From assembly GCF_000315625.1 (NCBI RefSeq), contig NW_005434649.1, forward strand, positions 434,001-498,000: a stretch of DNA of 64,000 nucleotides. The letters run 5' to 3'. The position numbers and the translations under genes are program-made. The DNA comes from Guillardia theta CCMP2712. Lineage: Eukaryota > Protista > Cryptophyta. The notes below the pieces were generated by a model. The model was not told the DNA's origin, did no database searches, and saw only the letters and a program-made list of their open reading frames with translations. Shown piece by piece: positions 4,494 to 64,000 of the stretch (position 1 is its first letter; each line of letters opens with the position of its first letter).

Positions 4494-7400
4494 TCAAGTA
4501 AACTTCTCGATCGCTGCCATGAGCACCTTCAACCTCTCCTTGTTCCCTGCCGACCGACCGCAGACCGAGTGGTTGCAAGACGACTGCATCCCAGCAATCG
4601 ACTTCCTCAGCTGAACGCAGAAGCTCGACGCTTCCTTGGTGTACTTGGCGTCCTTTCCCCTCATAGTCAGAAGCTGCATGGCGTTTGTGAGCGAGACCGA
4701 GAGCTTCTCTATCCCCTCCTCAAGCTCCTGCGCCAGAGGTAGAGGGAGAACCCGCCAGTGTGCGCAGGTCGCGGCACCGGCACATGTCAGAACTCCGTCC
4801 TGAACCTTGTGGTACTCCCATGGCCTCTCCATGTTCACAGAAGTCCATTCAATCACCTTCCTCCTCAGCACGGAGCATCCGATCCTGACCAGGAGCTCCT
4901 CGCCTACCGCCTGCTTGAAGGAGCTGCTGCAATGCCGGCTCATCAGGATTGCGCTCCCTTCCACCACCAGCTCCTGCACCTCCCCCAGCACAGCAAGGCT
5001 CTCCATCCTCCTCCAGAGCACAACAGCGCTCAGGTTGCCCCCGTGGAACGCTGGCACGCAACCCACGATCTCTGCCGCCTGCTTTTCGGTGATCCACCAC
5101 ACGGAATCAGCGCGCATGCTGATCCTCGAGACATCGTTCACAGCGTCTGCAAGTCGCTCCTCCTCCCAGAGGCGCTCCAGCCTCGCCAGCGCCAGGATGT
5201 CCTCCAGCACGGAGGAGACCAGGAACACTTTGCTCTCCTCCTCCTCCTCCTCCTCCTGCTCCACCATCTGCACGCTGGTCTCGTCCTCAGAAGCGACGAA
5301 GGGATCGGAGGGGCCCACCGAACAAGCTTCGATCTTCTCCCCGTCCTCGAAGCTGCGAAGTCTTGTCCTGAACTCTCGGCCCTCCATCACGCTCGGTCGC
5401 AAGGCCTGCAGCATGGCTCCTCGCAGGCCCCTAGGGACCTTCTTGAGCCCCCCGAAGAGGAGGAGGAGGAGGAGATCTCGGATGAGCTCGAACGTTCGCA
5501 CTTTGTCATGAGCATACAGGCAGCGAACAATCGGATCCAGCCACTTCCCCTCCTCCTCCCACGCACTGTCGACCTTCCTGCTCCTCCCGCTGCCTTTCTG
5601 AGACCAGTCGCTCACCTGCTGCACAACGAGAGCGAAATGCCCGGCAATGAGCAGGCAGGTGCGCGAGAGAAGTTCCCCGTGCTGGTGCTCGCACAGAGCA
5701 AGAGCTCGGTACTCCAGGAGCAGCCTGCACAGCTTCGAGGAGAGGGCGATAGGCATCGGGCTGCCGATCTTGGGGAAGATTTTCTTGGGGATCAGGTCCT
5801 TTTCGAAGCTGTAGCTCGTCCCCCTTCCTCCTCCCCCCGCCCTGCCCTCCTCCTGCTCCTTCTCCAGCTCCTCCTCCTCAAACAGGAAGTTCTCCCTGCT
5901 GGCGATGCTCTTGGACAGGCGCTCGAGCAGGTCAGCGCAGAGAGGCTTGTTGGGGTCGGAGTCTTTGCGGGAGAAGAACTGGCGCAGCACCGCCATCATG
6001 GAGGAGAAGTACTGCTGGGAAACATGCTCGGGCAGAACTTCGCGCAGGAGCTCGACGAAGAGGTCGTACTCCCTGAGAGGAGCCATGCGCTCGATCATCG
6101 CGTCCACCTGCCCCCCAGCTGCCTCGAAGTCCCTCTGGTACACCTTCGAGCAGAGCTTTCCCAGCTCGTCCTCCAGCTTGTCGAAGCTCTCGAGGACCGA
6201 GGATGGGTTCTTCATTCTCCCCGTCATCGTCCTCACCATGGCCTTCTTGGGCGACAGCGAGGACATGAGGCGGGGCGGTGGCCGCGCGATGCCGAGCTGA
6301 CCCTCAGCAGCGGCGAACATCACCTCGAAGGGGCTGACGTTGGAGAGGTGACAGCCGACGATCTCCGAGGACAGGAGCTTGCTGTCGAGGGCGCAGAGGC
6401 GGCAGTGAGGAGGAAGGTTGAGGCTCCACAGCCTCACGCTCCCGTCCTCCCCTCCGCTCGCCAGCATCTCCCCGTGGCTCTTCGACCAGGAGATGGAGGT
6501 GACGGAGCTGGTGTGCCAGGCTAGGTGGAAGGCCGGGGCACGAAGCATGCGGAGATCCCAAACCTGCCGATGACGTTGGGGGGGAGAAGAGGGGGAGGAG
6601 GAAGGGGATAGAGAGGGAGGGAGGCGAAGTGGACTGGGGTGTTGGCACAGGCAGGTATGGGGAAGGGGAGAGGAAACGACGAAGAAAGGAGGAAGGGGAG
6701 GGGAAGGAACAGAAGGAGGGGGAGAGAGAGAGAGTTTTGAGGGGAGCGGGGAGTATACAGCAAGACACTAAAATAACAGGAAATCCAGATAGAAGAGAAC
6801 GGGGGAGCAGGAGGGGTATGAGGTAGGAGCAGGACCTTGACGACTCCGTCGCCTCCTCCTGTGGCCATCAGGTTGTCGTCGAGCGGCGATTGCTGAATAC
6901 AGTTGACCTGAGTAGGAAGAGGGAGTGAGGAGGAGCTGGCATGTGAAGTGCGGTGCTGATGGCAGGAACAGGACCAGGACAATCAAGAACGCTCTTGACT
7001 TTCACAACTCAAGTCGCTCACCGAGGAGGAGTGCGCGTTCATGAGGTCGAAGGCAAGGCTGCTGGGCACTCGTTCCAGGGTCTCCTCTGACCTCATCAAC
7101 CTCGTGTCGACGATTGACATCCTTCCCTTGGCCCCCCCCACCAAGATCCGCTCCTCCCTCATCTTCACCTCACAGCACCGTATGTGAAAGTCTGACAATC
7201 GCTCAAGTCAGAGAAGAGCAAAGGTGGCTGATATGCTGCGATGCTCCAACAAGCAAACATGCAGGCAGCTTACACATGGATACAGACGCGGACGGCCGGC
7301 CGGCCGGCAAGCAGGCAAGCAGGCAGGAAGGAACGAAGGAACGAAGGACTGAGAGCAGAAAGGGTTGAGGAGGGAGATAGAGGATGGAAGGAGGGAGAGC

Positions 7401-49795: not shown

Positions 49796-50918
49796 TTACA
49801 CCTGTCATGTCGTGGTCAACTACAAGATAATATGCATCATCGAATCCGCCTGACCTCCATTGCTGCGACCGATGAAGACTTCAAAGAAATTGGGTCTTCT
49901 TCAATAGCTTCAGCGATCTTGAGAGCTTGCTTTGCTGCAATCCACTTCTTCCGTGCTGATGCAGTCTCATCAATCAAAGTTTCAACCTGTTGGAAATGAT
50001 AGAAGAAGCTCAGCTAGGGTTTCTCTTCCAATCGATTTGTAACACCTGTTGCTTGATTGGAGCGAGTTGGTGAAGTGCCTCCTTTGCACTCAAGAATCCA
50101 TGACTGCGCACTGCCTCAGTCATCTTGTCCCGTTGTGCCAAGGCATCTTTCAAGCGATCCTTCACTTGCACTACTTCTTTCCTTGCTTGCTGATAATCTT
50201 TGCGGGCGTTTGCTAAAAGTTTCAATCGGTTTTCTTTGATTGCTTGCTTTTCCTCGCGCAACTTTAGAAACTGCTCTTCCCTTTCCTCGCGAGCTGCCCT
50301 TTCTCGCGCCATTTTCTCCAAGTCTTCCTGGAACTGAGGAGAGACCATCCCCCCCGCATGCTCATTCACGGTCTTGGATTGCGCTAAGCTTTGTTGCAAT
50401 GGCTGGCGAGTTGCAAATGATGCAGAGCTTTCCTCTACTCTCGTGTTCTGATTTTGGTGAGCACCAACATGTTTCTTTTCATTGACAATATCGTTTTGAG
50501 ATGGAGTCGAACGAAGCAAGTCGTCCTCTTCATGTTGTTGATCGCTGTCCGTAGTTTTCTGAATCAAACGAACCAAATGTTCCACTGATTTCTTTTCCCA
50601 CTTCCTATTGAGATCCTCTTGCTCTGAAATCGCTGCTTGTCGATCACGAAAAAACTTGATTTGCTCTGGCTTGAGTTGATGGCTTGCAACCTCCAGGGCA
50701 GCAGAGATGGCTGAGTCTAACCGAGGGCCATGTTTACCCTCGCCATCGTTGCTCATAGTAGCAATGGTGTGGCCTCTAGGAATCAAGGTGCATGCAAGAA
50801 CAACGGACATCAAGAATGTCCCACCTGCCACTAGGGTATAGAAGCGCTTCATCTTTCCTGTATCGCCATCCTCGTCTCCCCCTTCCCCTGCCCCATACCG
50901 TCGCTGCCTAGCCGACAT
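49796..50918 (-). CDS. Type II membrane-anchored coiled-coil protein (spliced; continues past the ORF-track end)
   Basis: N-terminal TM FYTLVAGGTFLMSVVLACTLI, then coiled coil. GT-AG intron ~49987-50045 is followed by exon VETLIDETASARKKWIAAKQ. 3' end approximate. Confidence 0.6.
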
Positions 50919-51319
50919 GTGAGCCTATTTCTGGAAAGATGACACTGAGGTAAGAGGGTGATGATTTGGCATTCGGCCCGGATGCCACTGAGGGCCGGGC
51001 CGCCCCGGCCCCCGCGATGCCGCCGCGGACCGTGTCGGACGGACTGGTGACTCCGGCCGGGCTATACTCGGTGACCGTGACGGTGACCCTTAAAGTCACA
51101 CTGTGACAAGTTAACTGAGTCAACTCCGATGATCGGCAGAGAGCGACGTGATTACATCAGTTATCATCCCCGCCGCTCAGTGGAACTGCAACCGGCCGGG
51201 CGGCCCGGCGGGCGGCTCGGAGGAGCCCCCCGCAGGCCGCCGCCGGCCCGGGGCCGCGCTCCGAGGCTCAAGTCATATCACTGAGAAGCAAACACCCACG
51301 TGGCTCCTACTCTGAGAGT

Positions 51320-51519
51320 ATTTATATTAAAGACCTTAAAGACCAATATGCATAAAAGCACTAAAAATGCATAAGTGAAATGCAAAATCCCATCTATTTC
51401 GAATTTCATTACAACTTAAATTTAAAGACCAAAAGATAAAATGCATGAATACTATTAAAATGCATGATTTCTAAAAATACATTTACATATACTACTAGTG
51501 TACTATAATATATTCTATA
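51320..51519 (+). repeat. Left terminal inverted repeat (200 bp)
   Basis: ATTTATATTAAAGACCTTAAAGACC...TATAATATATTCTATA; checked block by block against the right copy with no mismatch found. Confidence 0.97.
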
Positions 51520-51714
51520 GAATTTACAATAAAAATCTATTACCAGTCTGGTAAGGCCATTGCCATGCCCTTACGCAAGGGTCGCAAGCTTGCGTAGCAA
51601 GCACTAAGGCCATAGCACTGGCGTTAGCCATGTGCGTTATCTATAGCCACTCCTTTCAATCCAATATATGCTTTGCATAATCTATAAAAATACATATACT
51701 ATATATATTCTATA
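51520..51714 (+). repeat. Hairpin-rich ~200-bp repeat, unit 1
   Basis: TTTACAATAAA..ATCTATTACCAG...CCCTTACGCAAGGGTCGCAAGCTTGCGTAGCAAGC...GCACTGGCGTTAGCCATGTGC; homologous to the units at 54507-54989. Confidence 0.9.
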
Positions 51715-54505
51715 CATAGCGTTGTCGGGTCAAGGAACTTGCTGACAATTGGGATTTGTACCAGATCCAGGCGTTTTCCAGTACAAAATTGTGTGTAAGT
51801 AAAAAATCGAAGGATTGGAAGGTTTGAAAATCCATTTCCAGCGCTGCACGTTCAACGGCAACCGGGGGTAATTGAGAGCTTAGATAAGTAAACAGTTGTT
51901 CCTATTGCCTTTGCATAGGATCACTTAGGCCCTTGTATAGTGGAGTAATGATTTGTACCAGAACCTGATGGGTAGGCGTGGTAGTATTTCAAATATTCGA
52001 ACCCAACGGACGCGACAGGGGGGTGGGGGGTACAGGTCTTGGTCTGGTACTGTAATGGGTACCTTTTAAAATACATTTAGCAGAGGGGGTCTCCCTCCCC
52101 ATCTCCCTGCCCTCCGCACTTGCGCATCCCTATCCTTCCCTGTCCATGAGTCTCAGACTCTCGTCAGACCTTCCCTGATGACCCTCAACTTTCTTTGACG
52201 CTTCTGTCTGCCTTGTCCTTCCTCAACTTGCTGGAAATTCAAACTCTGAAACCATGCCCATGAGTTGACAAGCACTGAGTTTCTCAGTTTGAATGCGGGA
52301 GGAAAGATGATTCATGGAATGAAACTCAGTGGTTCATATTTCAAGCTGATGGATACGAGTCGTATAGCACTGGCTTATGACTGTCATTTTACTTCTCAAT
52401 GATACAGCATCACGAACTTGCTCTCGATCCATCAGTACTTGCAAAGGGTCATTTTTCAGACAGAACTTCGAGTCCATCTTTATTTTGCGTCGATCCACAC
52501 GATGACATCTGTTTGATACACTATGTTTGATGAATAGCAAGAAAGCAAGGCTGAACTGTGCACCGCTTGACTGAATTTTCTACAATACTCTTCAATTGTG
52601 TAAGAGAGCATGTCACATGTAATCATACCAGGCAAACAAGTCACAGTATCGCTCCAAACCGCGTTGTGCTTAAAACTGAGACTCTACATGAAGATGTTAT
52701 CGGACTAGTCGAATGATGTACAACTTTATGGTGATACGTGGTTTAGAACTGTTGCAAAGCGGACATGGGAATATGTAGCGGCCTAGGTGATGTTTTCAAC
52801 GTACTTCAATAAAACAATGCCAAGTTGTTGCTAACAACATCATCATTTTTACATGAGCCTGCATGACCTGATGTACATGTTAGAGAAGTCGATGCTCATT
52901 CATCAAAAGAGTGGTTAGACAAGAAACTGGTAGATGCTTCTGCGCAGCATTCTTGTGTATGTGGAATCGTGCACACTCACCGTCGTGTGGAAGTGTTTGC
53001 ACATTCTTCTGCGCAAGTCTCATACATTGTCCTTATCATCTGGAATGGTTGACTTTTGCTGCAAGTAATATGAGCAGCGCAAAGTTGGCAAACTTATCCA
53101 TATGGTTGGAATGCCGGCGATGCATTGCAGCCTGCATAGCACCTGAGCGCTTTGTTCCACTTATCGCTTGGTTCCAAACAATTGATGATATCGCAGCATG
53201 CAACTCGCATTGACCCAAGGGTGTCAAGCGAAGAAAAGATCAGGATGATGGAAGGGCGAGAATGCAGCGAATAAGAGAAGCTGGTCAGGCTCAGTTTACT
53301 TTGTGTAAGAAAATGCCAATGCTTTGTACATGTTAGGTTACAAAGAAAGAGGCAAGAAAGCTCTGGTATGATACTCGAGAAGAAAGATTTATTCAAAAGG
53401 GTATGTCCATTTTCATCTGCATGATTCAATCGGATCCAACATCAATTAACTGCTCCTGATACCATGTCAGTCTAGTCACAACAAAGATATCAGCACCTTG
53501 AAAATTTCTTGCTTCGACTCGAGGTGAAGGAAATGAAATATGATTTACAATGCTATAAGGGGTATCGTTTTGTCGCTCAAAGCGTCTTGATTGTAAGTCA
53601 TGAAATAGAACACGACATGCAATCAATTTGCAAGTCATGCCTTCATGTGGTACCTCATCACTGCCATTTGATGAATGCACTGGTATTCCTTGAAACTCTT
53701 TACATGCCTTGGCAATACACTTGCATATTGCTCAGACCGCCCTCAAGCCCGACTCTTTGCAGCAGATTCCTATGAAATAAGTATAGATCATGCTGTCTCC
53801 GTGACATGCTTCATGACTTCCTACTTATTGCTCATGAGAGTCAATGTCATCCATCGTACAGCGCCACTAGCGGACGGTCCGTGCAGAGTACTACTTATTC
53901 AAGCTGCTAAAATCTATGATGATCAACCCTCTTTACATGTGTTTGCAATCACAGAGATGTTTTCAGACTACTGCGCTCACACCAGATTCTGCAGGGATTG
54001 CCTCTGCTTGTCCTCGTCTGAGCTCTCCTGCTGCAGATGAGTCACGTCTGCGTAACAACATTCACTTGCTAACCTTGGATATGCAACCAGGGAAGGGAAG
54101 GGGCAAGGCTTGAGAGCTCCCTCTGATCTACAAGGGTGGTCTATGTTGGTCGGAGGCAGGGTAGGGTCCAAAACTTGACCCCATCGGAGAAGGCACTTTC
54201 ACTGGGAAACAGGTGGGTCCAAAGCATCATAGTTTGAACAGGGGAGGTACCGCATAAACTATTTTGGTACAAGTTTTCCTAACAGTACTTGAATATGTAC
54301 CATAAAATTGGTACTGTTGGTACAATTATTTGCTACCAGGAAGTACCCTACCCCCTTAAACAGGTCCCAACCAATTTGAATCAGCTCCCAGCCGTCTGAC
54401 CCACCCCAGACCCCAACTGCCATTTGCTATTCACATGTGTCGAAGGATACCCCCACAGAAAACTATTGGAAACCAGAGGGGTCAGTTGAGAGCGACAACG
54501 CTATG
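51715..54505. mobile_element. Nested ~2.8-kb putative DNA transposon (13-bp TIRs), non-autonomous or decayed
   Basis: CATAGCGTTGTCG at 51715-51727 and CGACAACGCTATG at 54493-54505. It interrupts the repeat array at a unit junction; GTAC motifs cluster at both ends; GC is higher than in the flanks; no recognisable transposase. Confidence 0.75.
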
Positions 54506-54506
54506 A

Positions 54507-54989
54507 GAATTTACAATAAATCTATTACCAGAATGATAAGGCCACCACACCGCATTTAGAAGAAGGTCGCCAAGTTTGTGAAACAAACCATAAGCCATAG
54601 CACTTGCGTAGCAATGTGCGTCATCTATAGCCACCCTTACAAACCTCCATTATGCTCTCAAACATATACTTTGCATAATTTATAAAATACATTTACATAT
54701 CCTATAAATATCCTATATTCTTTACAACAAATCTATTACCAGTTTGGTCAGCCATATGCATCGCCCTTACGCAAGGGTCGCAAGCTTGCGCAGCAAGCAC
54801 TAAGGCCTAGCACTGGCGTTAGCCATGTGCGTTATCTATAACCACCCTTACAACCCTCCATTATACACCGTCACACATACTTTGCATAATTTATAAAAAC
54901 ATATATCTTACATTAAATATCATATATTCCACAATAAAATCTATTACCAGTCTGGTCAGCCATCTGCATCGCCCTTACGCAAGGGTCGC
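54507..54989 (+). repeat. Hairpin-rich ~210-bp repeat, units 2, 3 and partial 4
   Basis: Units begin ~54507, ~54721 and ~54931, each with ACAA..AATCTATTACCAG followed by the hairpin cassette. Confidence 0.9.
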
Positions 54990-55039
54990 TACAAAAACTA
55001 CTCCCTCTCTGCAAAATATTCCTTAACAAAAATTTCACA

Positions 55040-56100
55040 GCACACAAAAATTATTCACCCTCAACCATCCTCACCCCTCCCCCTGTAATTAAATCTATAC
55101 ACCGTCAACCCATCCGCCCCTACATACTCACCATCCCTCATTATCAAACTCATGCTATCCTCCAATGCCTTCAACGCCTCCACATCCACATTGCTTGATC
55201 CCTTCTTTATCTCTAATGTCATCCTACACAAACCCCTCCTTACATTACATTTTTATTTTTCTATCTCCTACGCACCCCACCCACGCCTTTTTATCACCCA
55301 TATTCCTCTCATTCACTCCTTTTAATATTTTCTCCATTCACTTTATTCACTACCCCTCTCTATTCTCCATCCCTTTATTCACTTATGTATCACTCGTTTC
55401 CTCACCCATCATGTCTATCACCCCTAACGTCCTCTCTATCAATCTATCCCTATACCTCCTCCCACTCTCCAACCCCACAAAACGTGACATCCATATCATC
55501 CTACTCCACCTCTCCTTCATCACTACCCCATACAATCTCAACAACATCTTCACCCTCTTCCCCTTCTGCTCCCCTAATACATCCTTCATATCTATATCCA
55601 CCCTATCCATATCCTTCACCCTACACTTATAATTCCCCCTCTTGTCCCTCCTCATCCATACCCTCATCATTCTATCCTCACCCCTCCTCCTCAACGATCC
55701 TATCACCTCCCTCTCCGTTAAACCCCAATCACCTCCTTGCTTCCTCTCTACACTCTCCATTATCCTCCGTCTCTATCTCCTCTATCCTCTCACTAAACTC
55801 ACTCTCCACCCTCACCCTCCCCTCAACACCAACTCCACCTCACTCTTACCCTCACTCTCCATTCTTACAAATGGCGTCTCTATATCTATACTCCTACCAT
55901 CCATCCTCAACTTTATCATCCTCATATCACCCCTCTCCGAGGCTCCTTACAATCCCCTACACTTATCCTTGACACATCCAACTCACTCACACTCAACATA
56001 CCTTATCAGACTACTCTACCCCCTTTACATCCCTTTCTCATTTTTATACCCACATCTTCCCTCAGTCAATTACGGCAATACTCTTTGATATCCATCCTAA
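55040..56100 (-). pseudogene. Compositionally extreme, frameshifted coding remnant (possibly including a small jelly-roll/minor capsid-like gene)
   Basis: Plus strand is very G-poor. Minus strand reads protein-like in changing frames: MRMIKLRMDGRSIDIETPF.. / RVRVESEFSERI.. / ..NYKCRVKDMDRVDIDMKDVLGEQKGKRVKMLLRLYGV. Confidence 0.35.
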
Positions 56101-56300
56101 TATCCCCTTTATTAACCCTTTTCTAATTCGGACAAATCCCCCGGCTAAGTCAATTAACTTCTCCACTAAATGGAACCTTTCCCACAAAAAGGCGTGGGTC
56201 ACACCTATATCCTTTAATGTTATATATCCCTTACCATGCTTCGTATAAATATTATCATATGTATGATTTAAGACTTAATTAATAAACAAATGTACTAAAT

Positions 56301-56837
56301 ATGTCATGTAATGGCGATGGATCTTGTCTTGCACAAACAACCTCATCTAATGATTACGCATACCAGTTTGAATGTGCCCATCAATGCAAACCCCTTCCAT
56401 GCCCTAATTTTATCGTCTGTGATACCATTGCTCCACTCTGGCTTTTTAATATGCATAGTGGATTGTGTATGGGTTGTAATATAAAATTTGGGACTTGGGG
56501 TACTCAGACGGGCAAAGGAAAACTTGATTTCTTTGATGATCTTGAATGTCCAATATGTCTTCAAATTACAAAGTGTGTTTCTCAACCTAATTGCAATCAT
56601 TCAACATGCATCACTTGCTTCAAACGATGCTACTATGGTAAAGAAATGCCATCATTCCCTTATCCTCATTTAGAAGAAGAGTATTATAATGATTTTGATA
56701 ACAACAATTATCAAAACAATTCTAAATGGGACCCTTTCAGAAAAACAATTGATAAATTTGAATCTTCATGCGAAACTATTGAATACAATAACGCCAACGA
56801 AACTGTTCTCAATAAATGCCCATTATGTCGTAAATAA
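56301..56837 (+). CDS. Cys-rich protein with split RING finger (putative E3 ubiquitin ligase, giant-virus style)
   Basis: CPIC...C.H..C..C followed, after a ~60-aa insertion, by KCPLCR; extra N-terminal Cys cluster; intronless, AT-rich. Confidence 0.75.
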   Translation: MSCNGDGSCLAQTTSSNDYAYQFECAHQCKPLPCPNFIVCDTIAPLWLFNMHSGLCMGCNIKFGTWGTQTGKGKLDFFDDLECPICLQITKCVSQPNCNHSTCITCFKRCYYGKEMPSFPYPHLEEEYYNDFDNNNYQNNSKWDPFRKTIDKFESSCETIEYNNANETVLNKCPLCRK

Positions 56838-56887
56838 CTCATACTTAAGAAAAATACAATGTATTACATTATGACTTCTTTCTCATT

Positions 56888-57565
56888 ATGAACAAAGCTT
56901 GTAAAGTTCAATTTGGCAATGTTAAATTCAAAACTTACAAAGATGCTGAAGATTATGTCCGCAATCTTCTTCGTCAGATTGGAATTTGCAAGAGTGTTAA
57001 ACAACTTAACGATGGTAATGTTTTGTATCAACAACTCCTTGATATCGCCTCAAATCATCCTAACAGTTTAAATAAGCTTGCTAATGTAATTGACTTTTCA
57101 ATTCAACAAAGTTATATCAATAAAAGAGCATTAGCCTTGTTCATCATCAACAAAGATGGCTCTCTTCTTGATATCTCTTGGAGGATTTGTGTCACTGGAA
57201 AACCTAAAACTATCCGAACTGAGCTCTTATGCGCTTTACGCACATCTGTAGACCATCAGATTCTTGCTTTCAAAACAACTCATGATACCTCCTCCTGCTC
57301 TTTGTGTGGGACTTCTACTCTTAAATCGTTACATATCGATCATGATGTTCAGTTCATTCAACTTGTTGCTAATTTCTTGGATATTCAATCATCTTGTCCT
57401 ATCATATTCGATGACCTCAAAGAATATCCACATTCTCGGTATTTCTTTCCACAACATTTCAACTTTGAACAAGACTGGATCTCATTCCACCAACAACATG
57501 CCATTCTTCGGCCACTCTGTTCTCATTGTAATCTCTCACGACCCAAAATCACTAATTTACTTTGA
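56888..57565 (+). CDS. DCL/DUF3223-like domain fused to HNH-type endonuclease
   Basis: N-terminal HP....K ... FIINKDGS..DISWRICV (DCL-like); C-terminal CSLC...HIDH ... W..FH...A.LRPLCSHCN (Zn-binding HNH pattern). Confidence 0.7.
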   Translation: MNKACKVQFGNVKFKTYKDAEDYVRNLLRQIGICKSVKQLNDGNVLYQQLLDIASNHPNSLNKLANVIDFSIQQSYINKRALALFIINKDGSLLDISWRICVTGKPKTIRTELLCALRTSVDHQILAFKTTHDTSSCSLCGTSTLKSLHIDHDVQFIQLVANFLDIQSSCPIIFDDLKEYPHSRYFFPQHFNFEQDWISFHQQHAILRPLCSHCNLSRPKITNLL

Positions 57566-57605
57566 AGTCTTTTTTATATGTTCTTTTGTATTCGAGTTCT
57601 TCTTT

Positions 57606-58004
57606 ACCATTATGCTTTCGAAAATACCCTTAGGCTTTCAGCCATGCGCAGCACCGCCTTCATGCCTGAATAAAGGGGAGTCTAAGATCCTATCATACTG
57701 TCTCATAAGTCCTCACACTATTTAAACCAGCTTGGTAACACCCTATAGCCTTTACAACATCCTTGCATGCCCGACTCCCCTTTAATCCGGCCCTGACCGC
57801 TCCGTTTTTTATAAGAGTTTTTTGTCTGGTCAGGCCTTCCGTCAGGCTATTGAACACTCATTCAACAATCTTCCTCACCATCATGCTTTCGAAAATACCC
57901 TCAGGCTTTCAGCCATGCGCAGCACCGCCTTCAATTTGCCTTCATGCCTGAATAAAGGGGACTTTTAACCTACAAGGTTTGGTAACACCCTATGGCCTTT
58001 ATAA
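57606..58004 (+). repeat. Imperfect direct duplication with hairpin potential between convergent genes
   Basis: ACCATYATGCTTTCGAAAATACCCTYAGGCTTTCAGCCATGCGCAGCACCGCCTTCA..TGCCTGAATAAAGGGGGA at 57606 and 57877; TTGGTAACACCCTATRGCCTTTAYAA at 57732 and 57979. Confidence 0.9.
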
Positions 58005-58045
58005 GACTTCGCCTATATCATATGTATATTGATCCAAATAGTTCT

Positions 58046-61000
58046 TTATGGTGCTGCTAAAAAATTGAAACCTTTGATTACATCAATTATGTTTTCAATC
58101 TTATCTTGTTTTATCAGTATTAATTTGTAATCAAAATAACGATGTCTTTCTTTATTTTTTGTGTATTCTTTCTGTTTGCCTTCTGTTTTCATTTTACAAT
58201 TTAATAGTTTCTCTAGAAGGAAATTTATCTTACTTTCAGTTCTTTTGCTAAACTCTGGTTCCTTTAGTAAGAATTGGTTTATGAAACACTCATAAATCTC
58301 CTTTATCAACACCTCATTCTCACACAATCTCCTGCCTGATACATAACCCCTCTCAAGGGCATTGTGATCCCTCAGATCAATACCGAGCACATCAATAAGA
58401 TTGTCTAAGATATATTTCAATCTGTTATAAGTGTGCATAGCGTCATTCTGTATGATTACCTTAACAATGTTATATTTGTCTTGTGGCGAATTTAATACAA
58501 TGAGAGATGTAATGATGTTGTAAGGCTTTGTCATGAACTTGTCATATAACCTCTCATATTCCGTGAAGGGCAGCAATTCCTTGAATTCTATATTTTTTCC
58601 AGACATCTCATCCTTATATGTGGAAGTATATATCACGTCTGTAAAATACTTCGAATATATGTAAGTCTTAGTCAATGCCTTACGATCATTGCTGCTCTTC
58701 AACATATTCAGAATGTTTGTATATGCTATGTTGAAACCATAATATGTCCCTACATAACCCTCCCTTAACAACATATTGTGGAACTTTCCATACACAGGAT
58801 GATTATAGAAGCCATGAACTAAGGCCTCCTTCTCATCATGATCCTCCGGTGTTATATTATAATCTTCAGTTAATGCTTTATAAAGATCCTGATGGGTCCT
58901 GATACATCCCTTATCTACAAATAGGTTGTCCTTGTAACAATTGTCAATATGGTATTTAAATAACTCAATCAAAAAGGGCTTTGAGATATGATCTCTCTCT
59001 GCTATATCAATCCTGAGCCTCTCTTGCATCTCTCTATACGACGCCATCATGTTCTTATCGGTTCCATTGTATTTCTCTTTGATATGCCTCTCAATCTCAG
59101 ATCTATGAGGAGTATACCTATGCTCATAATCAAAATTCCTCTTGCAATAGATTATATTCAACTGATAGCCATCCTCATCGGTTTTTACGTATCGAAATCT
59201 TTGAGATGCCTGTATCATCTGATTTGTCTTTATGAAACCCTTCTCAATGTTCCCAAATTCTTCAATTATATGGATCTTCAAATCCCAATAATCAGGGGTC
59301 TCCTCGCTGAATCCAGTGCATATGGTGTTCGTGTGCAAGAACACCTGTACCTTGTCTTTTGCAATCAATGATGGGTTCTTTATATATTTATCAATCTCCT
59401 TATCCTTTTTTGTATCTCCTGTAACTATCACGGCCTTTATCCCTTCTCTTTCAAACCGATCCATAAACTTTTTCCTGTGCTTCTGGAACATCATTACACC
59501 GCACACATTCCGTCCTGCCTTAACATGTCTCACTATGTCTTCAAGTGCTAGATTCTCAACTGTATATTTGTCGCAATCTATCTTCTTTGAATACTTTGGA
59601 ATGTCACATGCTAGAACATACTTCTGTTTCAATCTTGTAGATGCTGTATGATAGAAAGATATTGTCTCCTGTTCATAGATAGATGCTAAGTTCTCGATGA
59701 AATTGACACATGGTTTAGATATATTGAATAAGGCATCTGCAAAGATTACCGCCTTAGCATTCAATATTACATTGTGCAGGATCTCATATATCTTGGTTCT
59801 GGTCTCTAGATCCTTTCTATCATCTGTAGTGCAATTCTCTAGAGCACCAATAGTCTCTTCTGCTTCATCTATAAAAACTAAATCATACTCTAAAAACTGT
59901 AACTTGTGCAAAGATTGTATGGAACACACAAGGCGTTGGCTATCGTAATTTGATCTGCTGGATGACTGATAGAGATTAAACAACCTTATATTGTCAAATT
60001 TCAGATCTTTTCGATGTTTGTTTATGGTCTTATTGAACCTTGAAGTAACAGAAGTCGCAAGATTGCGGTTTGCTATTATATTCAATACTCTATCATTTGG
60101 CTTTATAAGACCCAACATCTGTTCTGTCTTGCCATAACCACATCCTGCCGACAGGCATATGAACTTAGATGTTAATTGTATCATATCCCCATACCTTGGG
60201 TATGGCTTGACATTGAATATAGCTGGAAACTCATTGATTGGGATAACTGACCGTTTGAAGAGGTTACACTTAAACCATCCTGCCCATAAATCCTTGTTAC
60301 ACTTTGTAGCAAAATAATTAAGAAATCTATAAGGACCTAAAGGGTTAAATTCTCCCTCCTCTTGTTCTATCTTAGTCATAGAATAGTCTAATATAGACTT
60401 AATGAATTTATGATGTTTCTCTCTATCATTCTCAGCAATGGTTGGTATAACCTCCTTCAACCTCTTTATCATGGTTGCCATGTCCATTTTGTAGTAACCA
60501 GTTATGCCATTCTCATTGCACAGCCGCCTTAGTTGGTTTCTCTTTTGAAGGCTGTAGCTATGGCATTCTTCATATCCCTTTTCTGTCCAATTGAATATGT
60601 GCTCCCTGAAGACCTCAATCCTCTCTGAATAGTCTATAGGATTAGATCCTTGCAAGTCCTCAAAGAATTCCCTTGAAACACCAAGCAATACCTTGAATAT
60701 GGCTTTAACAATCCTGTACCATAGGCTAAAGTTTATGATGTTGATGTCATTCTTTATAGACTTTAAGCAACAGAGAATGTAATGATCATCATAGAATTCC
60801 TCTTGAGGGCTCTCTATGCTTAGCTTTATCTTAAGATCCTTCTTGATTGATTTTTTTATAATTGATGAATGTTTCTTATCTATGCCTGTTTCTCCTTTGA
60901 TTGTCTCTATTGGGATTATCACATTCTTTACAGTTCCATAGCTGCGTACAAGATACATGTAATAACTTAAACCTAAGGGTTGAACAGGTTTGAGGATCAA

Positions 61001-61810
61001 AGTGGAGCCCTTCTTGGATTGATAGGGCATGCGAAAGCACCTATTGTCTGAATAGATCCTAATATCTATGATTGGTTTAGGGAATTGGCTATCAAATAAG
61101 AAGAATTCAGAATCAAATAGATCTCTAAAGACTTGCCTCTGTTTCCATTCAAACAAGAAAGGGAGTATGATATGATACGAAACCTTATATGACCCTTTGC
61201 AGGATAATCCACAGGATTCTAGTATCACTGTATCATCCTTAGAAATGTTCAAATCAAAATGATTGTTTACAATGTTCACTAAGTTGGAACATAGGTTCAT
61301 AATCTTATCGAAAATAGGAAAGATGCCCTTCTCTCTCTGTTTATCATATTCTTGGGCCTGATTAATATTCTCTATGATATAATCTATATCAATAGGAAAT
61401 TTGACAAGATCATCATTTCCTAGTATCTCATATCCATGGAAATTATGTAGGAAGATAGGATGCTTATAATGCACCAATGCATACTGCTTGCTTCCAGGCT
61501 TAGCATCCGGGTCAGGAGTGTCTCTTGCAATCTTCACATTGGCTCTGTTCTTGATATGTAGATCACTTGTGTTCTGTAGAAGCCCATCCTTCCCATCCTT
61601 CAGACGATAAAACCAATTCACTTCCTGAATAAGTGTGGTTTGAAGGAATTCATACAGGATGTTACGGGTTTTCCTTTTGATACGCTCAAATTGTCCTAAT
61701 TGTCTTGCTTTCAATCCAATACGGACAAATGATCTCAACTCATTTGTCTTGAAGTGTTCATATATCGTATTGTCATCAGTATCTTCCTTAGATGGAAAAT
61801 ATAATCGCAT
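58046..61810 (-). CDS. AEP primase-polymerase (PrimPol) fused to UL9/origin-binding-protein-type SF2 helicase
   Basis: AEP motifs YE.......KFPIDID, KVSYH, IDIRIYSDNRCFRMPYQSK; PriCT-like FSLWYRIVKAI; helicase motifs AGCGYGKT, NRNLA, SIQSLHKL, VFIDEAE, VIFADA, TNTICTGFS, QASQRFR. Confidence 0.88.
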   Translation of the reverse strand: MRLYFPSKEDTDDNTIYEHFKTNELRSFVRIGLKARQLGQFERIKRKTRNILYEFLQTTLIQEVNWFYRLKDGKDGLLQNTSDLHIKNRANVKIARDTPDPDAKPGSKQYALVHYKHPIFLHNFHGYEILGNDDLVKFPIDIDYIIENINQAQEYDKQREKGIFPIFDKIMNLCSNLVNIVNNHFDLNISKDDTVILESCGLSCKGSYKVSYHIILPFLFEWKQRQVFRDLFDSEFFLFDSQFPKPIIDIRIYSDNRCFRMPYQSKKGSTLILKPVQPLGLSYYMYLVRSYGTVKNVIIPIETIKGETGIDKKHSSIIKKSIKKDLKIKLSIESPQEEFYDDHYILCCLKSIKNDINIINFSLWYRIVKAIFKVLLGVSREFFEDLQGSNPIDYSERIEVFREHIFNWTEKGYEECHSYSLQKRNQLRRLCNENGITGYYKMDMATMIKRLKEVIPTIAENDREKHHKFIKSILDYSMTKIEQEEGEFNPLGPYRFLNYFATKCNKDLWAGWFKCNLFKRSVIPINEFPAIFNVKPYPRYGDMIQLTSKFICLSAGCGYGKTEQMLGLIKPNDRVLNIIANRNLATSVTSRFNKTINKHRKDLKFDNIRLFNLYQSSSRSNYDSQRLVCSIQSLHKLQFLEYDLVFIDEAEETIGALENCTTDDRKDLETRTKIYEILHNVILNAKAVIFADALFNISKPCVNFIENLASIYEQETISFYHTASTRLKQKYVLACDIPKYSKKIDCDKYTVENLALEDIVRHVKAGRNVCGVMMFQKHRKKFMDRFEREGIKAVIVTGDTKKDKEIDKYIKNPSLIAKDKVQVFLHTNTICTGFSEETPDYWDLKIHIIEEFGNIEKGFIKTNQMIQASQRFRYVKTDEDGYQLNIIYCKRNFDYEHRYTPHRSEIERHIKEKYNGTDKNMMASYREMQERLRIDIAERDHISKPFLIELFKYHIDNCYKDNLFVDKGCIRTHQDLYKALTEDYNITPEDHDEKEALVHGFYNHPVYGKFHNMLLREGYVGTYYGFNIAYTNILNMLKSSNDRKALTKTYIYSKYFTDVIYTSTYKDEMSGKNIEFKELLPFTEYERLYDKFMTKPYNIITSLIVLNSPQDKYNIVKVIIQNDAMHTYNRLKYILDNLIDVLGIDLRDHNALERGYVSGRRLCENEVLIKEIYECFINQFLLKEPEFSKRTESKINFLLEKLLNCKMKTEGKQKEYTKNKERHRYFDYKLILIKQDKIENIIDVIKGFNFLAAP

Positions 61811-61856
61811 GCTACTTTGCTATTATAACTAATAAATTTGTTTATATGGTTTTTAC

Positions 61857-62162
61857 TCACTTATGTGGAGTATTAGCTTCATTCTTTTCCATAATCTTTT
61901 TCTGATAATACCTCCTACTTTGCTCCTTAATTCGTTCCCTATATTCTGGATCATTTTTGTACCTCTCATTCCTATATTTACGGATACTCTCATTAACTTT
62001 TTCTCTAAATTCAGGATTTGTCTCATACCGTATTCTATTGCATCTGTTTATTACATCATACACAACTGTCTTTATTGTTCCATCATCCTTCCTCCGTTGA
62101 ATAAACTCTTTTGATTTCTTCCGGCTATACTCTCTCTCCGCTGCTCTCTTCTCCTCTTCCAT
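61857..62162 (-). CDS. Small basic helical protein (putative DNA-binding, virus-like)
   Basis: 101 aa; repeated RY..NPE[FY]RE motifs and SRRYYQKK; same strand and just upstream of the PrimPol-helicase. Confidence 0.6.
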   Translation of the reverse strand: MEEEKRAAEREYSRKKSKEFIQRRKDDGTIKTVVYDVINRCNRIRYETNPEFREKVNESIRKYRNERYKNDPEYRERIKEQSRRYYQKKIMEKNEANTPHK

Positions 62163-62205
62163 GTTATTTATAACTATATATGGGAATTGTTTATGTATTT
62201 ATTGG

Positions 62206-62757
62206 TTATCTACACAATGATTTCATGCTGTTTTCTATTGTCTTGAGAAAATTAATTCTATTCTGTCTTGTGAAGGTCTTTATGTCATTAAAAGAACCCT
62301 TCAGTTTATTTATTATTGACACTACATCATCCTTATCCTTCTCTTGTGCTTGTTTCAACTTTTTATTCTCTGCTTTTAAATCTTCTATGATCTGTTTATT
62401 CTTCTTTATCTCATTCTTCAGGTCACGATTCGCCCCCATCAGATGTGCATTGTGTATAGATAAGATCGCATTCTCTCTTCTTTCTGTATCATTCCGCAAG
62501 TCTTGAAAGATTTGTACAAACTCTGAGATCACATCTGAATATGTTCTCTCTTTGTCTTCAATTTCATTTATCATCGCATAATCCTTGTATGTAAACCTCA
62601 ATACATGTTCTTTTGTGTATTGCGATTCACATAGCTTTATACGGTTATTGTATCTACATAAAGGACATTGAAACAATATTACTGGGTAATATTCTTCATT
62701 ATACTTCACTATATTCTTATCTCTACCATCTATCATATTATTCACATCATAATACAA
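62206..62757 (-). CDS. Hypothetical protein with CxxC motif and coiled-coil C-terminus
   Basis: FQCPLC, then heptad-rich LKNEIKKNKQIIEDLKAENKKLKQ; starts just inside the right TIR. Confidence 0.55.
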   Translation of the reverse strand: MYYDVNNMIDGRDKNIVKYNEEYYPVILFQCPLCRYNNRIKLCESQYTKEHVLRFTYKDYAMINEIEDKERTYSDVISEFVQIFQDLRNDTERRENAILSIHNAHLMGANRDLKNEIKKNKQIIEDLKAENKKLKQAQEKDKDDVVSIINKLKGSFNDIKTFTRQNRINFLKTIENSMKSLCR

Positions 62758-62841
62758 TGCAGCTTGCTCTGATAAATCTTTTAACTCATAATGTGATAAG
62801 ATCTCATTTATTCTTTCATTCGATCTGAATGAATCAAATAA

Positions 62842-63041
62842 TATAGAATATATTATAGTACACTAGTAGTATATGTAAATGTATTTTTAGAAATCATGCA
62901 TTTTAATAGTATTCATGCATTTTATCTTTTGGTCTTTAAATTTAAGTTGTAATGAAATTCGAAATAGATGGGATTTTGCATTTCACTTATGCATTTTTAG
63001 TGCTTTTATGCATATTGGTCTTTAAGGTCTTTAATATAAAT
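62842..63041 (-). repeat. Right terminal inverted repeat (200 bp)
   Basis: TATAGAATATATTATAGTA...GGTCTTTAAGGTCTTTAATATAAAT, the reverse complement of 51320-51519. Confidence 0.97.
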
Positions 63042-63405
63042 GAGGCTATTTCGGCCTAGTCGGGGCGACTAATTAGGAAGTCGAGGACCCACCCCCTGCC
63101 CCCGATCTGACGATTTGCAGAGGCTGCCAGGTACTGAAGATTCACGCCGGTCCACACCGGCACCGGTAGTTACTGGGGCCAGAAAACACCGGTCTGAAGG
63201 GGTGGGCACCCACCCTCGAACCAGCAAAGTGACTTCACAAGGAGTCCCATTACCACCCCTACCCCCTCTTCTTAGTTCCTACTAGGCTCCTCTTGCTAGT
63301 GGCTCTGCATTTCTTGAGAGGATGGTTGGCGCGGGCAATTCGCCATGATCAGAGGTCGCCGTGCGCTGAGGACGTAGGAAGATTGAGCGAGCTTCAGCTG
63401 AAGTG

Positions 63406-64000
63406 ATGGAGATGGAACAGAAGTACAAGGAACTGCAGGAACTCTTGCAGCAGCGAGAGCAAGATCTCATGGCCGCTACCGACATAGGGGAAATGCTGCT
63501 GGAGCGAAACAGGAGCCTGAACGACAAGATCAATGCCCTAACCCTTAGAATCCAAGAGATGGAAGAAGAAAGATTGTGTGCTTCAGCATCTGACGAAGAT
63601 GAGAACATGAGAACCTCGTTGGAGCTTGAGCATGAGACTGAGCTCTCAAGTAGAGTTTTCCGGCGTGAAACCTCGCTTCAAGATGCTGTGGGAGAGCTCA
63701 ACAACTCCCTCATCATCAACGACAAACTTCGCAGTATCATCCAGCGCCTGGAAAGCACAATATCTGAGATGTCATACCAGTCTGCGGAGGCAACAGCCTT
63801 CATGTCCTGGAAGCTGTCGACGGACCGATCACACAGGAGCAAATTGAAAGAAGAGCTACAATCGCTAGAGAGGCAGCTTGATGACACTAGTGCGTTATGG
63901 AAGCAAGGAAACGATCAATCCATGACAGAGATATCCAAGCTGCAAGCTCTCAACTCCGATCTTCGTCGGCAAGTAATGGATCTGTCATCCGAAAATGAAG
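63406..64000 (+). CDS. Host coiled-coil protein, 5' part, with HAP1/BICD-like N-terminal CC1-box
   Basis: Frame open from ATG 63406 to the window end: MEMEQKYKELQELLQQREQDLMAATDIGEMLLERNRSL...; absent from the ORF track because there is no stop in the window. Confidence 0.65.
   Translation, partial: MEMEQKYKELQELLQQREQDLMAATDIGEMLLERNRSLNDKINALTLRIQEMEEERLCASASDEDENMRTSLELEHETELSSRVFRRETSLQDAVGELNNSLIINDKLRSIIQRLESTISEMSYQSAEATAFMSWKLSTDRSHRSKLKEELQSLERQLDDTSALWKQGNDQSMTEISKLQALNSDLRRQVMDLSSENE

What the first reader, a model, noticed from the sequence alone, without database searches (positions are those of the whole stretch)
51520..54989. Array of ~200-bp units with covarying hairpins and GNA triloops: candidate single-stranded-DNA origin or structured-RNA array
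Seen: 3.3 units directly inside the left TIR (51520-51714, then ~54507, ~54721, ~54931). Hairpin B is GCTTGC-GTA-GCAAGC (51588-51602), GTTTGT-GAA-ACAAAC (54574-54588, two compensatory pair changes) and GCTTGC-GCA-GCAAGC (unit 3). Hairpin C is GCAC-TGGC-GTTA-GCCA-T-GTGC versus GCAC-TTGC-GTA-GCAA-T-GTGC (another compensatory change). Hairpin A, CCCTT-ACGC-AAGGG, is kept in three units. Known: GNA triloops make exceptionally stable DNA minihairpins through a sheared G-A pair. Inference: selection acts on structure, and the free middle base with fixed G and A points to folded ssDNA, e.g. priming/loading sites for the element's PrimPol-OBP. Each cassette is preceded by an AT-rich spacer, so repeated small transcription units remain possible.
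Basis: partly seen in the sequence, partly recalled or inferred. Interest (0 to 1): 0.82.

Follow-up and report, generated by a model that had tools for sequence, protein, structure and literature searches.

The report
Tandem hairpin units in PrimPol element
Just inside one end of a small virus-like DNA element integrated in a protist genome lies a short array of ~210-bp repeats. Their small hairpins are kept by compensating mutations and carry the loop type that makes very stable DNA mini-hairpins, so they are most likely sites where the element's own primase-helicase starts copying, though a small-RNA role is not excluded.

Summary
The array holds three full units and one truncated unit (period ~211 bp) directly inside the left 206-nt inverted repeat of an 11.7-kb element (51320-63041). 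A 2.8-kb nested insertion splits the array. Hairpins B and C are real. Unit 2 carries four compensatory pair changes (2 of 500 shuffles reach this). Between units 1 and 3 the stems changed at 1 of 52 positions against 33 of 139 elsewhere (p = 2e-4).

New here: a metagenomic relative (L001, replicase 39% identical) has one homologous unit. Its hairpin C has three further compensatory pairs and the same GC-G(N)NA-GC tip. A decayed copy sits in Guillardia theta.

The 1254-aa protein is a PrimPol domain fused to a herpesvirus-UL9-type origin-binding helicase, by profile and by fold.

On the + strand, G is 26-27% in the hairpin blocks, 3-5% in the tails 3' of them and 3.7% in the next 1.1 kb.

Best reading (about 0.4): single-strand loading or priming sites of a replication origin. 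Main rival (about 0.3): repeated promoter-plus-structured-RNA units, because the AT-rich spacer looks like a promoter. No Rfam family matches. Function is inferred, not shown.

The parts
51320..51525 (.). Left terminal inverted repeat of the element (206 nt, 99% complementary to 62836-63041). It holds three AATGCATRA motifs. Its inner ~65 nt are homologous to the AT-rich spacer of the units.
   Evidence: (I1, D6, D10)
51520..51714 (+). Unit 1: hairpin A 51568-51581, hairpin B 51588-51602 (GTA loop), hairpin C 51615-51635 (GTTA loop), then a G-poor tail and the spacer motif at 51673-51689.
51715..54505 (.). Nested 2.8-kb insertion with perfect 13-nt inverted ends and subterminal GTACC-type repeats. 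No protein family hit. It interrupts the array and is not part of it.
   Evidence: (I4)
54506..54720 (+). Unit 2, the most diverged: hairpin B 54574-54588 (GAA loop, two compensatory pairs), hairpin C 54600-54619 (GTA loop, one compensatory pair), hairpin A degenerate, spacer motif 54671-54687.
54721..54930 (+). Unit 3: hairpin A 54764-54777, hairpin B 54784-54798 (GCA loop), hairpin C 54810-54830 (GTTA loop), spacer motif 54882-54898.
54931..54989 (+). Truncated unit 4: conserved start and hairpin A only. It runs straight into the G-poor stretch.
54990..56100 (+). G-depleted stretch (G 3.7% on the + strand, C 41%). No credible gene: the long + strand ORFs in all frames follow from the lack of G. 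A unit followed by a G-poor stretch is also seen in L001 and in G. theta L039.
56301..56837 (+). Gene for a 178-aa cysteine-rich protein with a C-terminal RING-like finger. It has many relatives in metagenomes.
56888..57565 (+). Gene for a 225-aa protein (DUF3223 match, PHROG 28887) with an H-x-D-H ... C-x-x-C-N motif that suggests an HNH-type nuclease.
57598..58006 (+). Second repeated non-coding module ('type 2', about 1.6 copies, spacing 271 nt) between the convergent genes. It is 72% identical to L001 although the coding DNA is not alignable. It has a long-range helix with 5 compensatory pairs.
   Evidence: (D5, D15, D16, I12)
58046..61810 (-). Intact gene for the 1254-aa replicase. The N-terminal part is a PrimPol (AEP) domain. 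The rest is an SF2 helicase closest to the herpesvirus UL9 origin-binding protein.
61857..62162 (-). Gene for a 101-aa protein. Its homologue sits just upstream of the replicase gene in L001 and in G. theta L039.
62206..62757 (-). ORF for a coiled-coil protein with a C-x-x-C pair. The first in-frame ATG is about 150 nt downstream of the spacer-like motif in the right TIR.
62836..63041 (.). Right terminal inverted repeat. The spacer-like motif is at 62885-62901 on the - strand.

Best explanation
The units are cis-acting replication modules of a capsid-less linear element that replicates with its own PrimPol/UL9-type helicase.

Inferred mechanism, step by step:
1. The AT-rich spacer melts.
2. 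On the + strand, the short GC-G(N)NA-GC hairpins B and C snap into very stable DNA mini-hairpins. These stay free of single-strand-binding protein and mark the site.
3. The G-depleted, and therefore unstructured, tail 3' of them offers a single-stranded landing strip. This gives a hairpin plus a 3' tail, the substrate that activates the herpesvirus origin-binding protein.
4. The pyrimidine-rich tail also serves as template for priming by the PrimPol domain.
5. Tandem copies add redundancy.

What is shown: the repeats, the hairpins, their compensatory evolution within and between elements, the loop class, the G depletion and the identity of the protein.

What is inferred: that the DNA rather than an RNA folds, and that the protein uses it.
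For: 1. Structure is maintained.
- Four compensatory pairs occur in unit 2.
- Stems are nearly invariant between units 1 and 3 while the flanks differ by 20-30%.
- Hairpin C in L001 has three more compensatory pairs and none broken. L001's replicase is only 39% identical.

2. Loop pattern.
- All seven B and C loops begin with G and end with A, while the middle base(s) and even the loop length (3 or 4 nt) vary.
- Six of the seven are closed by GC/GC, the published mini-hairpin DNA class GCGNAGC / GCGNNAGC.
- That class is reported at the phage G4 priming site, at RSF1010 ssiA used by primase RepB', and at phage N4 promoters (PMC13037366).
- None of the tetraloops is of the GNRA type usual in RNA (general knowledge).

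3. All these loops read G..A on the + strand only.

4. G content on the + strand is 26-27% in the hairpin blocks, 2.7-5.1% in the tails 3' of hairpin C and 3.7% over the next 1.1 kb. The layout of a unit followed by a G-poor stretch recurs in L001 and in G. theta.

5. The element's large protein is a PrimPol domain fused to a UL9-type helicase. The herpesvirus protein binds boxes around an AT-rich spacer. After unwinding it binds a hairpin with a three-base loop plus a 3' single-stranded tail (PMC12543377).

6. The array lies directly inside a terminal inverted repeat, and no Rfam family matches.
Against: - No experiment and no expression data bear on the question.
- Only 3.3 copies plus one intact and one decayed relative are available, so covariation rests on few independent events.
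- The AT-rich spacer looks like a promoter. It has an ATGCAT-type element plus a TATA-like box, it recurs in the right TIR upstream of a gene, and a similar arrangement lies upstream of a gene in L029.
- The + strand is also the sense strand of the next two genes.
- Hairpin A and the first hairpin are not supported by compensation. Hairpin B of unit 2 has a T-A closing pair, which is weaker as a mini-hairpin (PMC3201870, abstract as listed).
- All hairpins are on one strand and at one end only. Known ssi pairs serve both strands (general knowledge).
- L001 and G. theta carry a more classical origin-like module about 0.5 kb from the unit: direct and inverted 10-mers around an AT-rich core. The window lacks this module.
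- DNA folding z-scores do not differ between the strands.
Confidence: 0.4

Rival explanations
1. Each spacer is a promoter and each unit body is transcribed on the + strand. This gives either an array of small structured RNAs or duplicated 5' leaders, the last of which runs into the G-poor stretch. On this reading the hairpins are RNA hairpins.
For: - The spacer motif (for example 54671-54687) combines an ATGCAT-like element with a TATA-like box. It recurs at the inner end of both TIRs.
- In the right TIR it lies about 150 nt upstream of the first ATG of the 62206-62757 ORF.
- L029 has a similar ATGCAT-plus-TATA arrangement upstream of the homologue of the 225-aa gene.
- The + strand is the sense strand of the two genes downstream.
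- The neighbouring type-2 module has a long-range helix with 5 compensatory pairs and G-U pairs valid only on the + strand, which looks RNA-like.
- RNA folds of the + strand give z = -2.7, -1.6 and -1.6.
Against: - No Rfam family matches at E <= 1 and there is no tRNA.
- The loops are GUA, GAA, GCA, GUUA and GCUA, none of them GNRA. The interchange of 3- and 4-base loops fits the DNA mini-hairpin class better.
- All compensations are Watson-Crick to Watson-Crick.
- The spacer is not found upstream of the unit in L001 or in G. theta.
- There is no run of four or more T on the + strand inside a unit.
Confidence: 0.3
2. The array is a functionless tandem duplication of the subterminal region. The small palindromes are kept perfect by a replication mechanism, namely intrastrand template switching at quasi-palindromes or gene conversion between units, and not by selection for a function.
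For: - Only one end carries the array. Copy number differs between elements (3.3 in the window, 1 in L001).
- One unit is truncated and a transposon sits in the array without evident harm.
- All within-window compensations are in a single unit.
- Template switching at quasi-palindromes is an established mutational mechanism (general knowledge).
Against: - The unit, with hairpin C and its G..A loop, is retained in an element whose replicase is only 39% identical and whose coding DNA no longer aligns.
- Stems changed at 1 of 52 positions against 33 of 139 in the rest between units 1 and 3.
- Template switching explains perfect stems. It does not explain the fixed G and A of the loops or the G-depleted tails.
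Confidence: 0.12
3. The palindromes are double-stranded binding sites (iterons) for a dimeric protein of the element. Candidates are the C-terminal domain of the replicase, the HNH-like 225-aa protein or the RING protein. The sites would serve origin recognition, end processing or transcription control without any hairpin forming.
For: - The primary sequence motifs ATTACCA and GGGTCGCAA are conserved between the window and L001 without pairing partners.
- AATGCATRA occurs three times per TIR against 0.9 expected in the whole window.
- The UL9-type protein binds duplex boxes.
Against: Base-specific duplex recognition predicts conserved bases, not compensatory change. Hairpins B and C change both arms together, and hairpin C has an asymmetric bulge. 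A fixed G..A with a free middle base in an odd-length centre is not what dimer sites require.
Confidence: 0.1

Closest known systems
Herpes simplex virus OriS / OriS* with the UL9 origin-binding protein
   Same: - The replicase carries a helicase whose best sequence and fold match is this protein.
- The known origin combines recognition sites, an AT-rich spacer and, after unwinding, a hairpin with a three-base loop plus a 3' single-stranded tail that activates the protein (PMC12543377).
- The oligonucleotide printed in that paper has a loop of the G-N-A kind closed by C-G.
   Different: - Here the helicase is fused to a PrimPol domain.
- No inverted boxes flank the spacer.
- The units are about 210 bp, tandem and at one end only.
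- The stems are shorter (4-8 bp against 12).
- The conserved DNA-binding motif of the C-terminal domain was not found.
- The host is a protist.
Single-strand initiation signals: RSF1010 ssiA/ssiB with primase RepB', and the phage G4 complementary-strand origin
   Same: These are hairpins tipped by mini-hairpin sequences at the place where a dedicated primase starts synthesis on single-stranded DNA. The mini-hairpin resists SSB binding (PMC13037366).
   Different: These are bacterial plasmid and phage systems. ssiA and ssiB lie on opposite strands, whereas here all hairpins read on one strand and are repeated in tandem. No priming has been shown here.
Streptomyces linear-replicon telomere palindromes (Tap/Tpg end patching)
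   Same: A series of short palindromes with GNA loops (sheared G-A) sits near the end of a linear replicon with terminal inverted repeats. They fold in single-stranded DNA and are bound by a primase-like protein (PMC5449611).
   Different: Those palindromes are at the very 3' end, inside the terminal repeat and at both ends. Here the array starts about 200 bp in, internal to the TIR, and at one end. There is no terminal protein, and the host is eukaryotic.
Phage N4 early promoters (DNA hairpin promoters)
   Same: Several hairpins with 5-7 bp stems and three-base G-N-A type loops lie near one genome end and are recognised in single-stranded form by a polymerase (PMC13037366; PMC5449611).
   Different: They need the N4 virion RNA polymerase. 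No RNA polymerase gene is seen in this element.
Primase-superfamily 2 helicase (Prim-S2H) replicases of polinton-like viruses in cryptophytes
   Same: The replicase has the same domain pairing and comes from the same kind of host. The paper reports it in 20 Rhodomonas lacustris PLVs and one metagenomic element (PMC12220804). A homologue of the window's replicase is integrated in Guillardia theta.
   Different: No capsid, packaging ATPase or protease gene was found here by Pfam or PHROGs, in an element of about 9 kb. The paper describes no hairpin arrays.

Membership tests
PrimPol / archaeo-eukaryotic primase | AEP catalytic motifs (acidic pair, s-x-H, acidic residue) conserved in the family | tested here: met
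   Invariant D141, S211, H213, D249, R260 and K266 in the alignment of 11 relatives. The motifs are visible in the translation.
PrimPol / archaeo-eukaryotic primase | AEP fold | tested here: met
   Model of residues 1-479 (pLDDT 72). The best PDB matches are human PrimPol (E 2e-7, TM 0.54-0.58 on the target), then poxvirus D5/E5 AEP, the HSV primase subunit and ASFV PrimPol. The profile hits human PrimPol at 2e-4.
UL9-type origin-binding protein (SF2 helicase) | SF2 helicase core closest to UL9 | tested here: met
   The profile of 9 relatives hits four OBP structures at about 1e-17, and the next hits are above 0.2. The model of residues 480-1254 matches OBP best at E 1e-14, against 2e-10 for the next helicase.
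UL9-type origin-binding protein (SF2 helicase) | C-terminal sequence-specific DNA-binding domain with its conserved motif | tested here: inconclusive
   The Foldseek alignment spans about 800-870 columns of the 811-residue chain, but the global TM is only 0.40-0.42. The sequence match covers the helicase part only. I did not see the conserved motif named in PMC12543377 when reading the translation.
UL9-type origin (OriS-like) | Inverted recognition boxes flanking an AT-rich spacer | tested here: not met
   No inverted box pair flanks the spacers in the window. L001 and G. theta do have direct and inverted 10-mers around an AT-rich core, but that module is absent from the window.
UL9-type origin (OriS-like) | [quoted passage not shown] | tested here: inconclusive
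   Sequences able to form such hairpins, followed by a G-poor tail, are present. Whether they form in vivo cannot be tested here.
Mini-hairpin DNA (GCGNAGC / GCGNNAGC) | Sequence motif | tested here: met
   It is met by hairpin B of units 1 and 3, by hairpin C of units 1, 2 and 3, and by L001 hairpin C. Hairpin B of unit 2 has a T-A closing pair instead. The motif is not enriched in the window as a whole (33 against 29 expected).
Mini-hairpin DNA (GCGNAGC / GCGNNAGC) | Extraordinary stability of the folded single strand | not testable with these tools
   Nearest-neighbour DNA folding gives -2.9 to -6.6 kcal/mol. That energy model may not include the special stability reported for this loop class.
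Single-strand initiation signal (ssi) | Primer synthesis by the cognate primase at the hairpin | not testable with these tools
   This is inference only.
Streptomyces-type telomere palindromes | Palindromes at the extreme 3' end, within the terminal repeat, at both ends | tested here: not met
   The array begins at the inner edge of the left TIR and is absent from the right end.
Any described RNA family (Rfam 15) | Covariance-model match | tested here: not met
   There is no match at E <= 1 in 50000-64000 on either strand. ARAGORN finds no tRNA or tmRNA.
Polinton-like virus / virophage | Capsid and packaging genes | tested here: not met
   The element's ORFs give no capsid, ATPase or protease hit in Pfam or PHROGs. 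The searches covered ORFs only, so spliced genes could be missed.
Transpoviron | Superfamily 1 helicase fused to an inactivated polymerase | tested here: not met
   The replicase is PrimPol plus an SF2 UL9-type helicase. The family feature is taken from the title of PMC5499653.

The most novel reading that the evidence does not exclude
A previously undescribed family of capsid-less linear replicons exists in cryptophyte-like protists. They encode a PrimPol fused to a UL9-type origin-binding helicase. They start replication at arrays of DNA mini-hairpins followed by G-depleted, structure-free single-strand tracks. This would be the first eukaryotic counterpart of bacterial ssi signals and a simple relative of the herpesvirus OriS* mechanism. 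The family also carries a second, even better conserved structured non-coding module (57598-58006).
Probability: 0.3. Interest if true: 0.8.

Novelty: new variant of a known kind. Interest (0 to 1): 0.62.

Why it matters
How the many primase-helicase replicons of protists (polinton-like viruses and their capsid-less relatives) start replication is unknown, and no origin has been mapped. Here a replicase with a recognisable origin-binding-protein ancestry sits next to a non-coding module with three properties:
- its hairpins evolve by compensation;
- it keeps the exact loop class known to give very stable DNA hairpins at priming sites;
- it is followed by DNA stripped of G on one strand.

That gives a concrete, testable candidate for an origin in this class. 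It also gives a possible evolutionary link to the hairpin step of herpesvirus origin activation.

Non-coding modules of these elements are conserved between relatives whose proteins are only 39% identical. They are therefore useful markers for finding such elements. If the RNA reading is right instead, these are new structured RNAs carried by a selfish element.

Tried and rejected
Searches with no result:
- Rfam at E <= 1 gave nothing, and there is no tRNA.
- Exact-sequence look-ups of seven window proteins found none in the collection, so other copies from the source genome could not be fetched.
- The word-based search with the replicase found nothing. The exhaustive search found only 26 relatives.

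Contigs of relatives:
- Those of P0002, P0003 and P0005 are too short to show ends.
- Relatives of the 225-aa and RING proteins gave coding similarity only.
- P0034 lies in a prokaryotic context and no DNA was returned.

Collection scans:
- Protein scans of viral and metagenome contigs gave only distant helicases.
- A 24-nt pattern from the type-2 module found nothing in viral or genome contigs.
- A gapped pattern of the type-1 unit gave 10 hits in viral contigs and 19 in genome contigs. These numbers are near my rough estimate of chance hits, and none is a relative by nhmmer or tblastn.

Structure tests that failed or were rejected:
- One search used wrongly placed columns and is uninformative. 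It was replaced.
- The multiloop helices of the MFE fold and the first hairpin were rejected as unsupported.

Interpretations considered and rejected:
- Transpoviron: wrong helicase class.
- Helitron-type ends: no Rep/helicase of that kind.
- Streptomyces-type telomere: wrong position.
- Coding region: no ORF in the units, and the ORFs in the G-poor stretch follow from its composition.

The mini-hairpin motif cited is the one printed in PMC13037366. The short IUPAC patterns I searched with were read from tool output.
Full report
**1. What is there**

The window is GC-rich (55-60%) up to about 51.3 kb and then drops to 35-47%. The low-GC part is an element bounded by 206-nt terminal inverted repeats, 51320-51525 and 62836-63041, that are 99% complementary.

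Directly inside the left repeat lies the reported array:
- unit 1, 51520-51714;
- unit 2, 54506-54720;
- unit 3, 54721-54930;
- a truncated unit 4, 54931-54989.

The gap between units 1 and 2 is a nested 2.8-kb insertion, 51715-54505. It has perfect 13-nt inverted ends and no recognisable gene. I compared the two pieces of the array apart throughout.

The inner ~65 nt of each TIR are homologous to the AT-rich spacer that ends each unit (D6 and D10). The array therefore looks like tandem duplication of the first segment inside the TIR.

**2. Are the hairpins real?**

On the four-row alignment, four pairs changed on both sides and stayed paired. All four are in unit 2: two in B, one in C and one in A. 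Only 2 of 500 column shuffles reach this, and slid partners give 0-1. A simple binomial for 4 of 6 touched pairs being compensated gives 4e-4 to 4e-3.

Between units 1 and 3 the stems changed at 1 of 52 positions against 33 of 139 elsewhere, p = 2e-4.

Some features are not supported. The multiloop helices of the MFE fold and the first hairpin (TTACCA/TGGTAA) show only breaking changes. Hairpin A is lost in unit 2.

**3. Relatives**

The 1254-aa protein has only 26 relatives among 1.8 billion representatives.

The closest is P0001, 39% identical, on a 6.8-kb metagenome contig, L001. Its coding DNA does not align with the window, but two non-coding pieces do.

(a) L001 687-821 is a single copy of the unit (nhmmer E = 9e-27).
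- The motifs ATTACCA and GGGTCGCAA are kept.
- Three hairpins follow in the same order.
- Hairpin C reads GAC-ATGC[GCTA]GCAT-GTC in L001, against GCAC-TGGC[GTTA]GCCA-T-GTGC in units 1 and 3 and GCAC-TTGC[GTA]GCAA-T-GTGC in unit 2.
- Read outward from the loop, that is three more compensatory pairs, none broken, and an unchanged GC-G..A-GC tip.

(b) The second repeated module, 57598-58006, is 72% identical to L001 1-409. It has a 15-pair long-range helix with five compensatory pairs.

A third element lies in Guillardia theta (XP_005839857.1). It has a full-length replicase homologue (32% identity), the small upstream gene and one decayed copy of the unit (E = 1e-3).

In all three elements the unit is followed by DNA poor in G on the same strand. 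The array form itself is not conserved.

**4. The protein**

A profile of nine relatives hits the solved structures of the herpesvirus origin-binding protein at about 1e-17 and human PrimPol at 2e-4.

| Part modelled | pLDDT | Best PDB match | E-value |
|---|---|---|---|
| residues 480-1254 | 75.7 | herpesvirus origin-binding protein (alignment over nearly the whole chain) | 1e-14 |
| residues 1-479 | 72 | human PrimPol, then poxvirus and herpesvirus primases | 2e-7 |

The AEP catalytic residues are invariant in the family.

The other genes are:
- a RING-like protein;
- a DUF3223 protein with an HNH-like motif;
- a 101-aa protein;
- a coiled-coil protein.

No capsid or packaging gene was found. 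A primase-SF2 helicase pairing has been reported in cryptophyte polinton-like viruses (PMC12220804).

**5. DNA or RNA?**

For DNA:
- Every B and C loop begins with G and ends with A. The middle varies, and the loop length switches between 3 and 4 nt.
- Six of the seven loops are closed by GC/GC, which is the mini-hairpin DNA class GCGNAGC / GCGNNAGC.
- That class is reported at the phage G4 priming site, at RSF1010 ssiA used by primase RepB' and at phage N4 promoters (PMC13037366).
- Similar GNA palindromes fold in the single-stranded telomere overhangs of Streptomyces (PMC5449611).
- The herpesvirus origin-binding protein is activated by a hairpin with a three-base loop plus a 3' single-stranded tail (PMC12543377).
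- Here the + strand has 26-27% G in the hairpin block, 2.7-5.1% in the tail 3' of hairpin C and 3.7% over the next 1.1 kb. A strand without G cannot fold, so this reads as a hairpin followed by a structure-free tail.

For RNA:
- The spacer combines an ATGCAT-type element with a TATA-like box. It recurs in both TIRs.
- It lies upstream of a gene at the right end.
- It resembles the sequence upstream of a gene in L029.
- The + strand is the sense strand of the next genes.
- The type-2 module looks RNA-like.

Rfam has no match. Folding z-scores do not separate the strands.

**6. Verdict**

Structure-dependent constraint on hairpins B and C is well supported for so few copies.

The most likely function is a cis-acting replication module: single-strand loading or priming sites next to an easily melted spacer (confidence about 0.4). 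A promoter-plus-structured-RNA array is the main rival (about 0.3). The remaining readings are neutral duplication with palindrome correction (about 0.12) and duplex binding sites (about 0.1). Origins and promoters often coincide, so the first two need not exclude each other.

By kind this is a new variant of known hairpin-bearing origin or ssi elements. It sits in a rare, undescribed capsid-less PrimPol-OBP element of protists.

**7. Limits and a declared slip**

No other copy from the source genome could be reached, and all function is inferred.

The functional test that would settle the matter is outside what this report may propose.

Noticed in passing
window 57598-58006; L001 1-409: A second repeated non-coding module lies between the convergent 225-aa and replicase genes. 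It is 72% identical to the metagenomic relative although the proteins are only 39% identical. It has a 15-pair long-range helix with 5 compensatory pairs and an invariant hairpin around two T6 runs. The closer relative L029 lacks it: there the two genes are 24 bp apart.
   Followed up: partly
window 54990-56100; 55279-55292 (+) and 56186-56199 (-); L039 17380-17393 (-): A 1.1-kb stretch has only 3.7% G on the + strand. Most of it is bracketed by a perfect 14-nt inverted repeat, and the same 14-mer occurs once in the G. theta element. The long ORFs in all three + frames are a by-product of the composition.
   Followed up: partly
window 51715-54505: A nested 2.8-kb element has perfect 13-nt inverted ends, subterminal GTACC-type repeats and no recognisable gene. 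It is probably a non-autonomous DNA transposon and it splits the array.
   Followed up: partly
window 16310-49276 (-): A single uninterrupted ORF of 10,988 codons. Its first 3000 residues, the only part scanned, contain many IPT/TIG domains plus Calx-beta and a laminin-G-like domain. It points to a protist host.
   Followed up: partly
L001 1258-1500; L039 15618-15733: An origin-like module is shared by the metagenomic and G. theta elements: the 10-mer AACGAGGGAA twice direct and once or twice inverted around an AT-rich core of about 90 nt. It is absent from the window element.
   Followed up: partly
L001 460-694 and 2527-2610 / 6704-6787: L001 carries a fragment 85% identical to the 3' end of the G. 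theta replicase gene next to its type-2 repeats. It also has 84-nt inverted repeats, each itself palindromic, that flank its full-length replicase gene. The contig may be rearranged or composite.
   Followed up: no
L009 3062-3336; L002 138-288: Contigs that encode more distant relatives of the helicase also carry tandem arrays. L009 has 57-bp units, each a 6-7 bp hairpin plus an AT-rich TATA-like stretch. L002 has 44-bp units.
   Followed up: no
window 56888-57565 (+): The 225-aa protein (DUF3223, PHROG 28887) has an H-x-D-H ... C-x-x-C-N motif suggestive of an HNH nuclease. Close relatives (75-84% identity) occur in two public sequencing runs. One more distant relative (33% identical, P0034) lies in a prokaryotic gene context.
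   Followed up: partly
window 51312-51319 and 63042-63049: No clean target-site duplication flanks the element. By eye, the six bases on either side agree at only four positions, although the TIRs are 99% identical.
   Followed up: no
L039 17220-17400 (-): The G. theta locus has a short tandem array with CCATGG and ACATGT palindromes next to an assembly gap, about 1.2 kb from its decayed unit.
   Followed up: no
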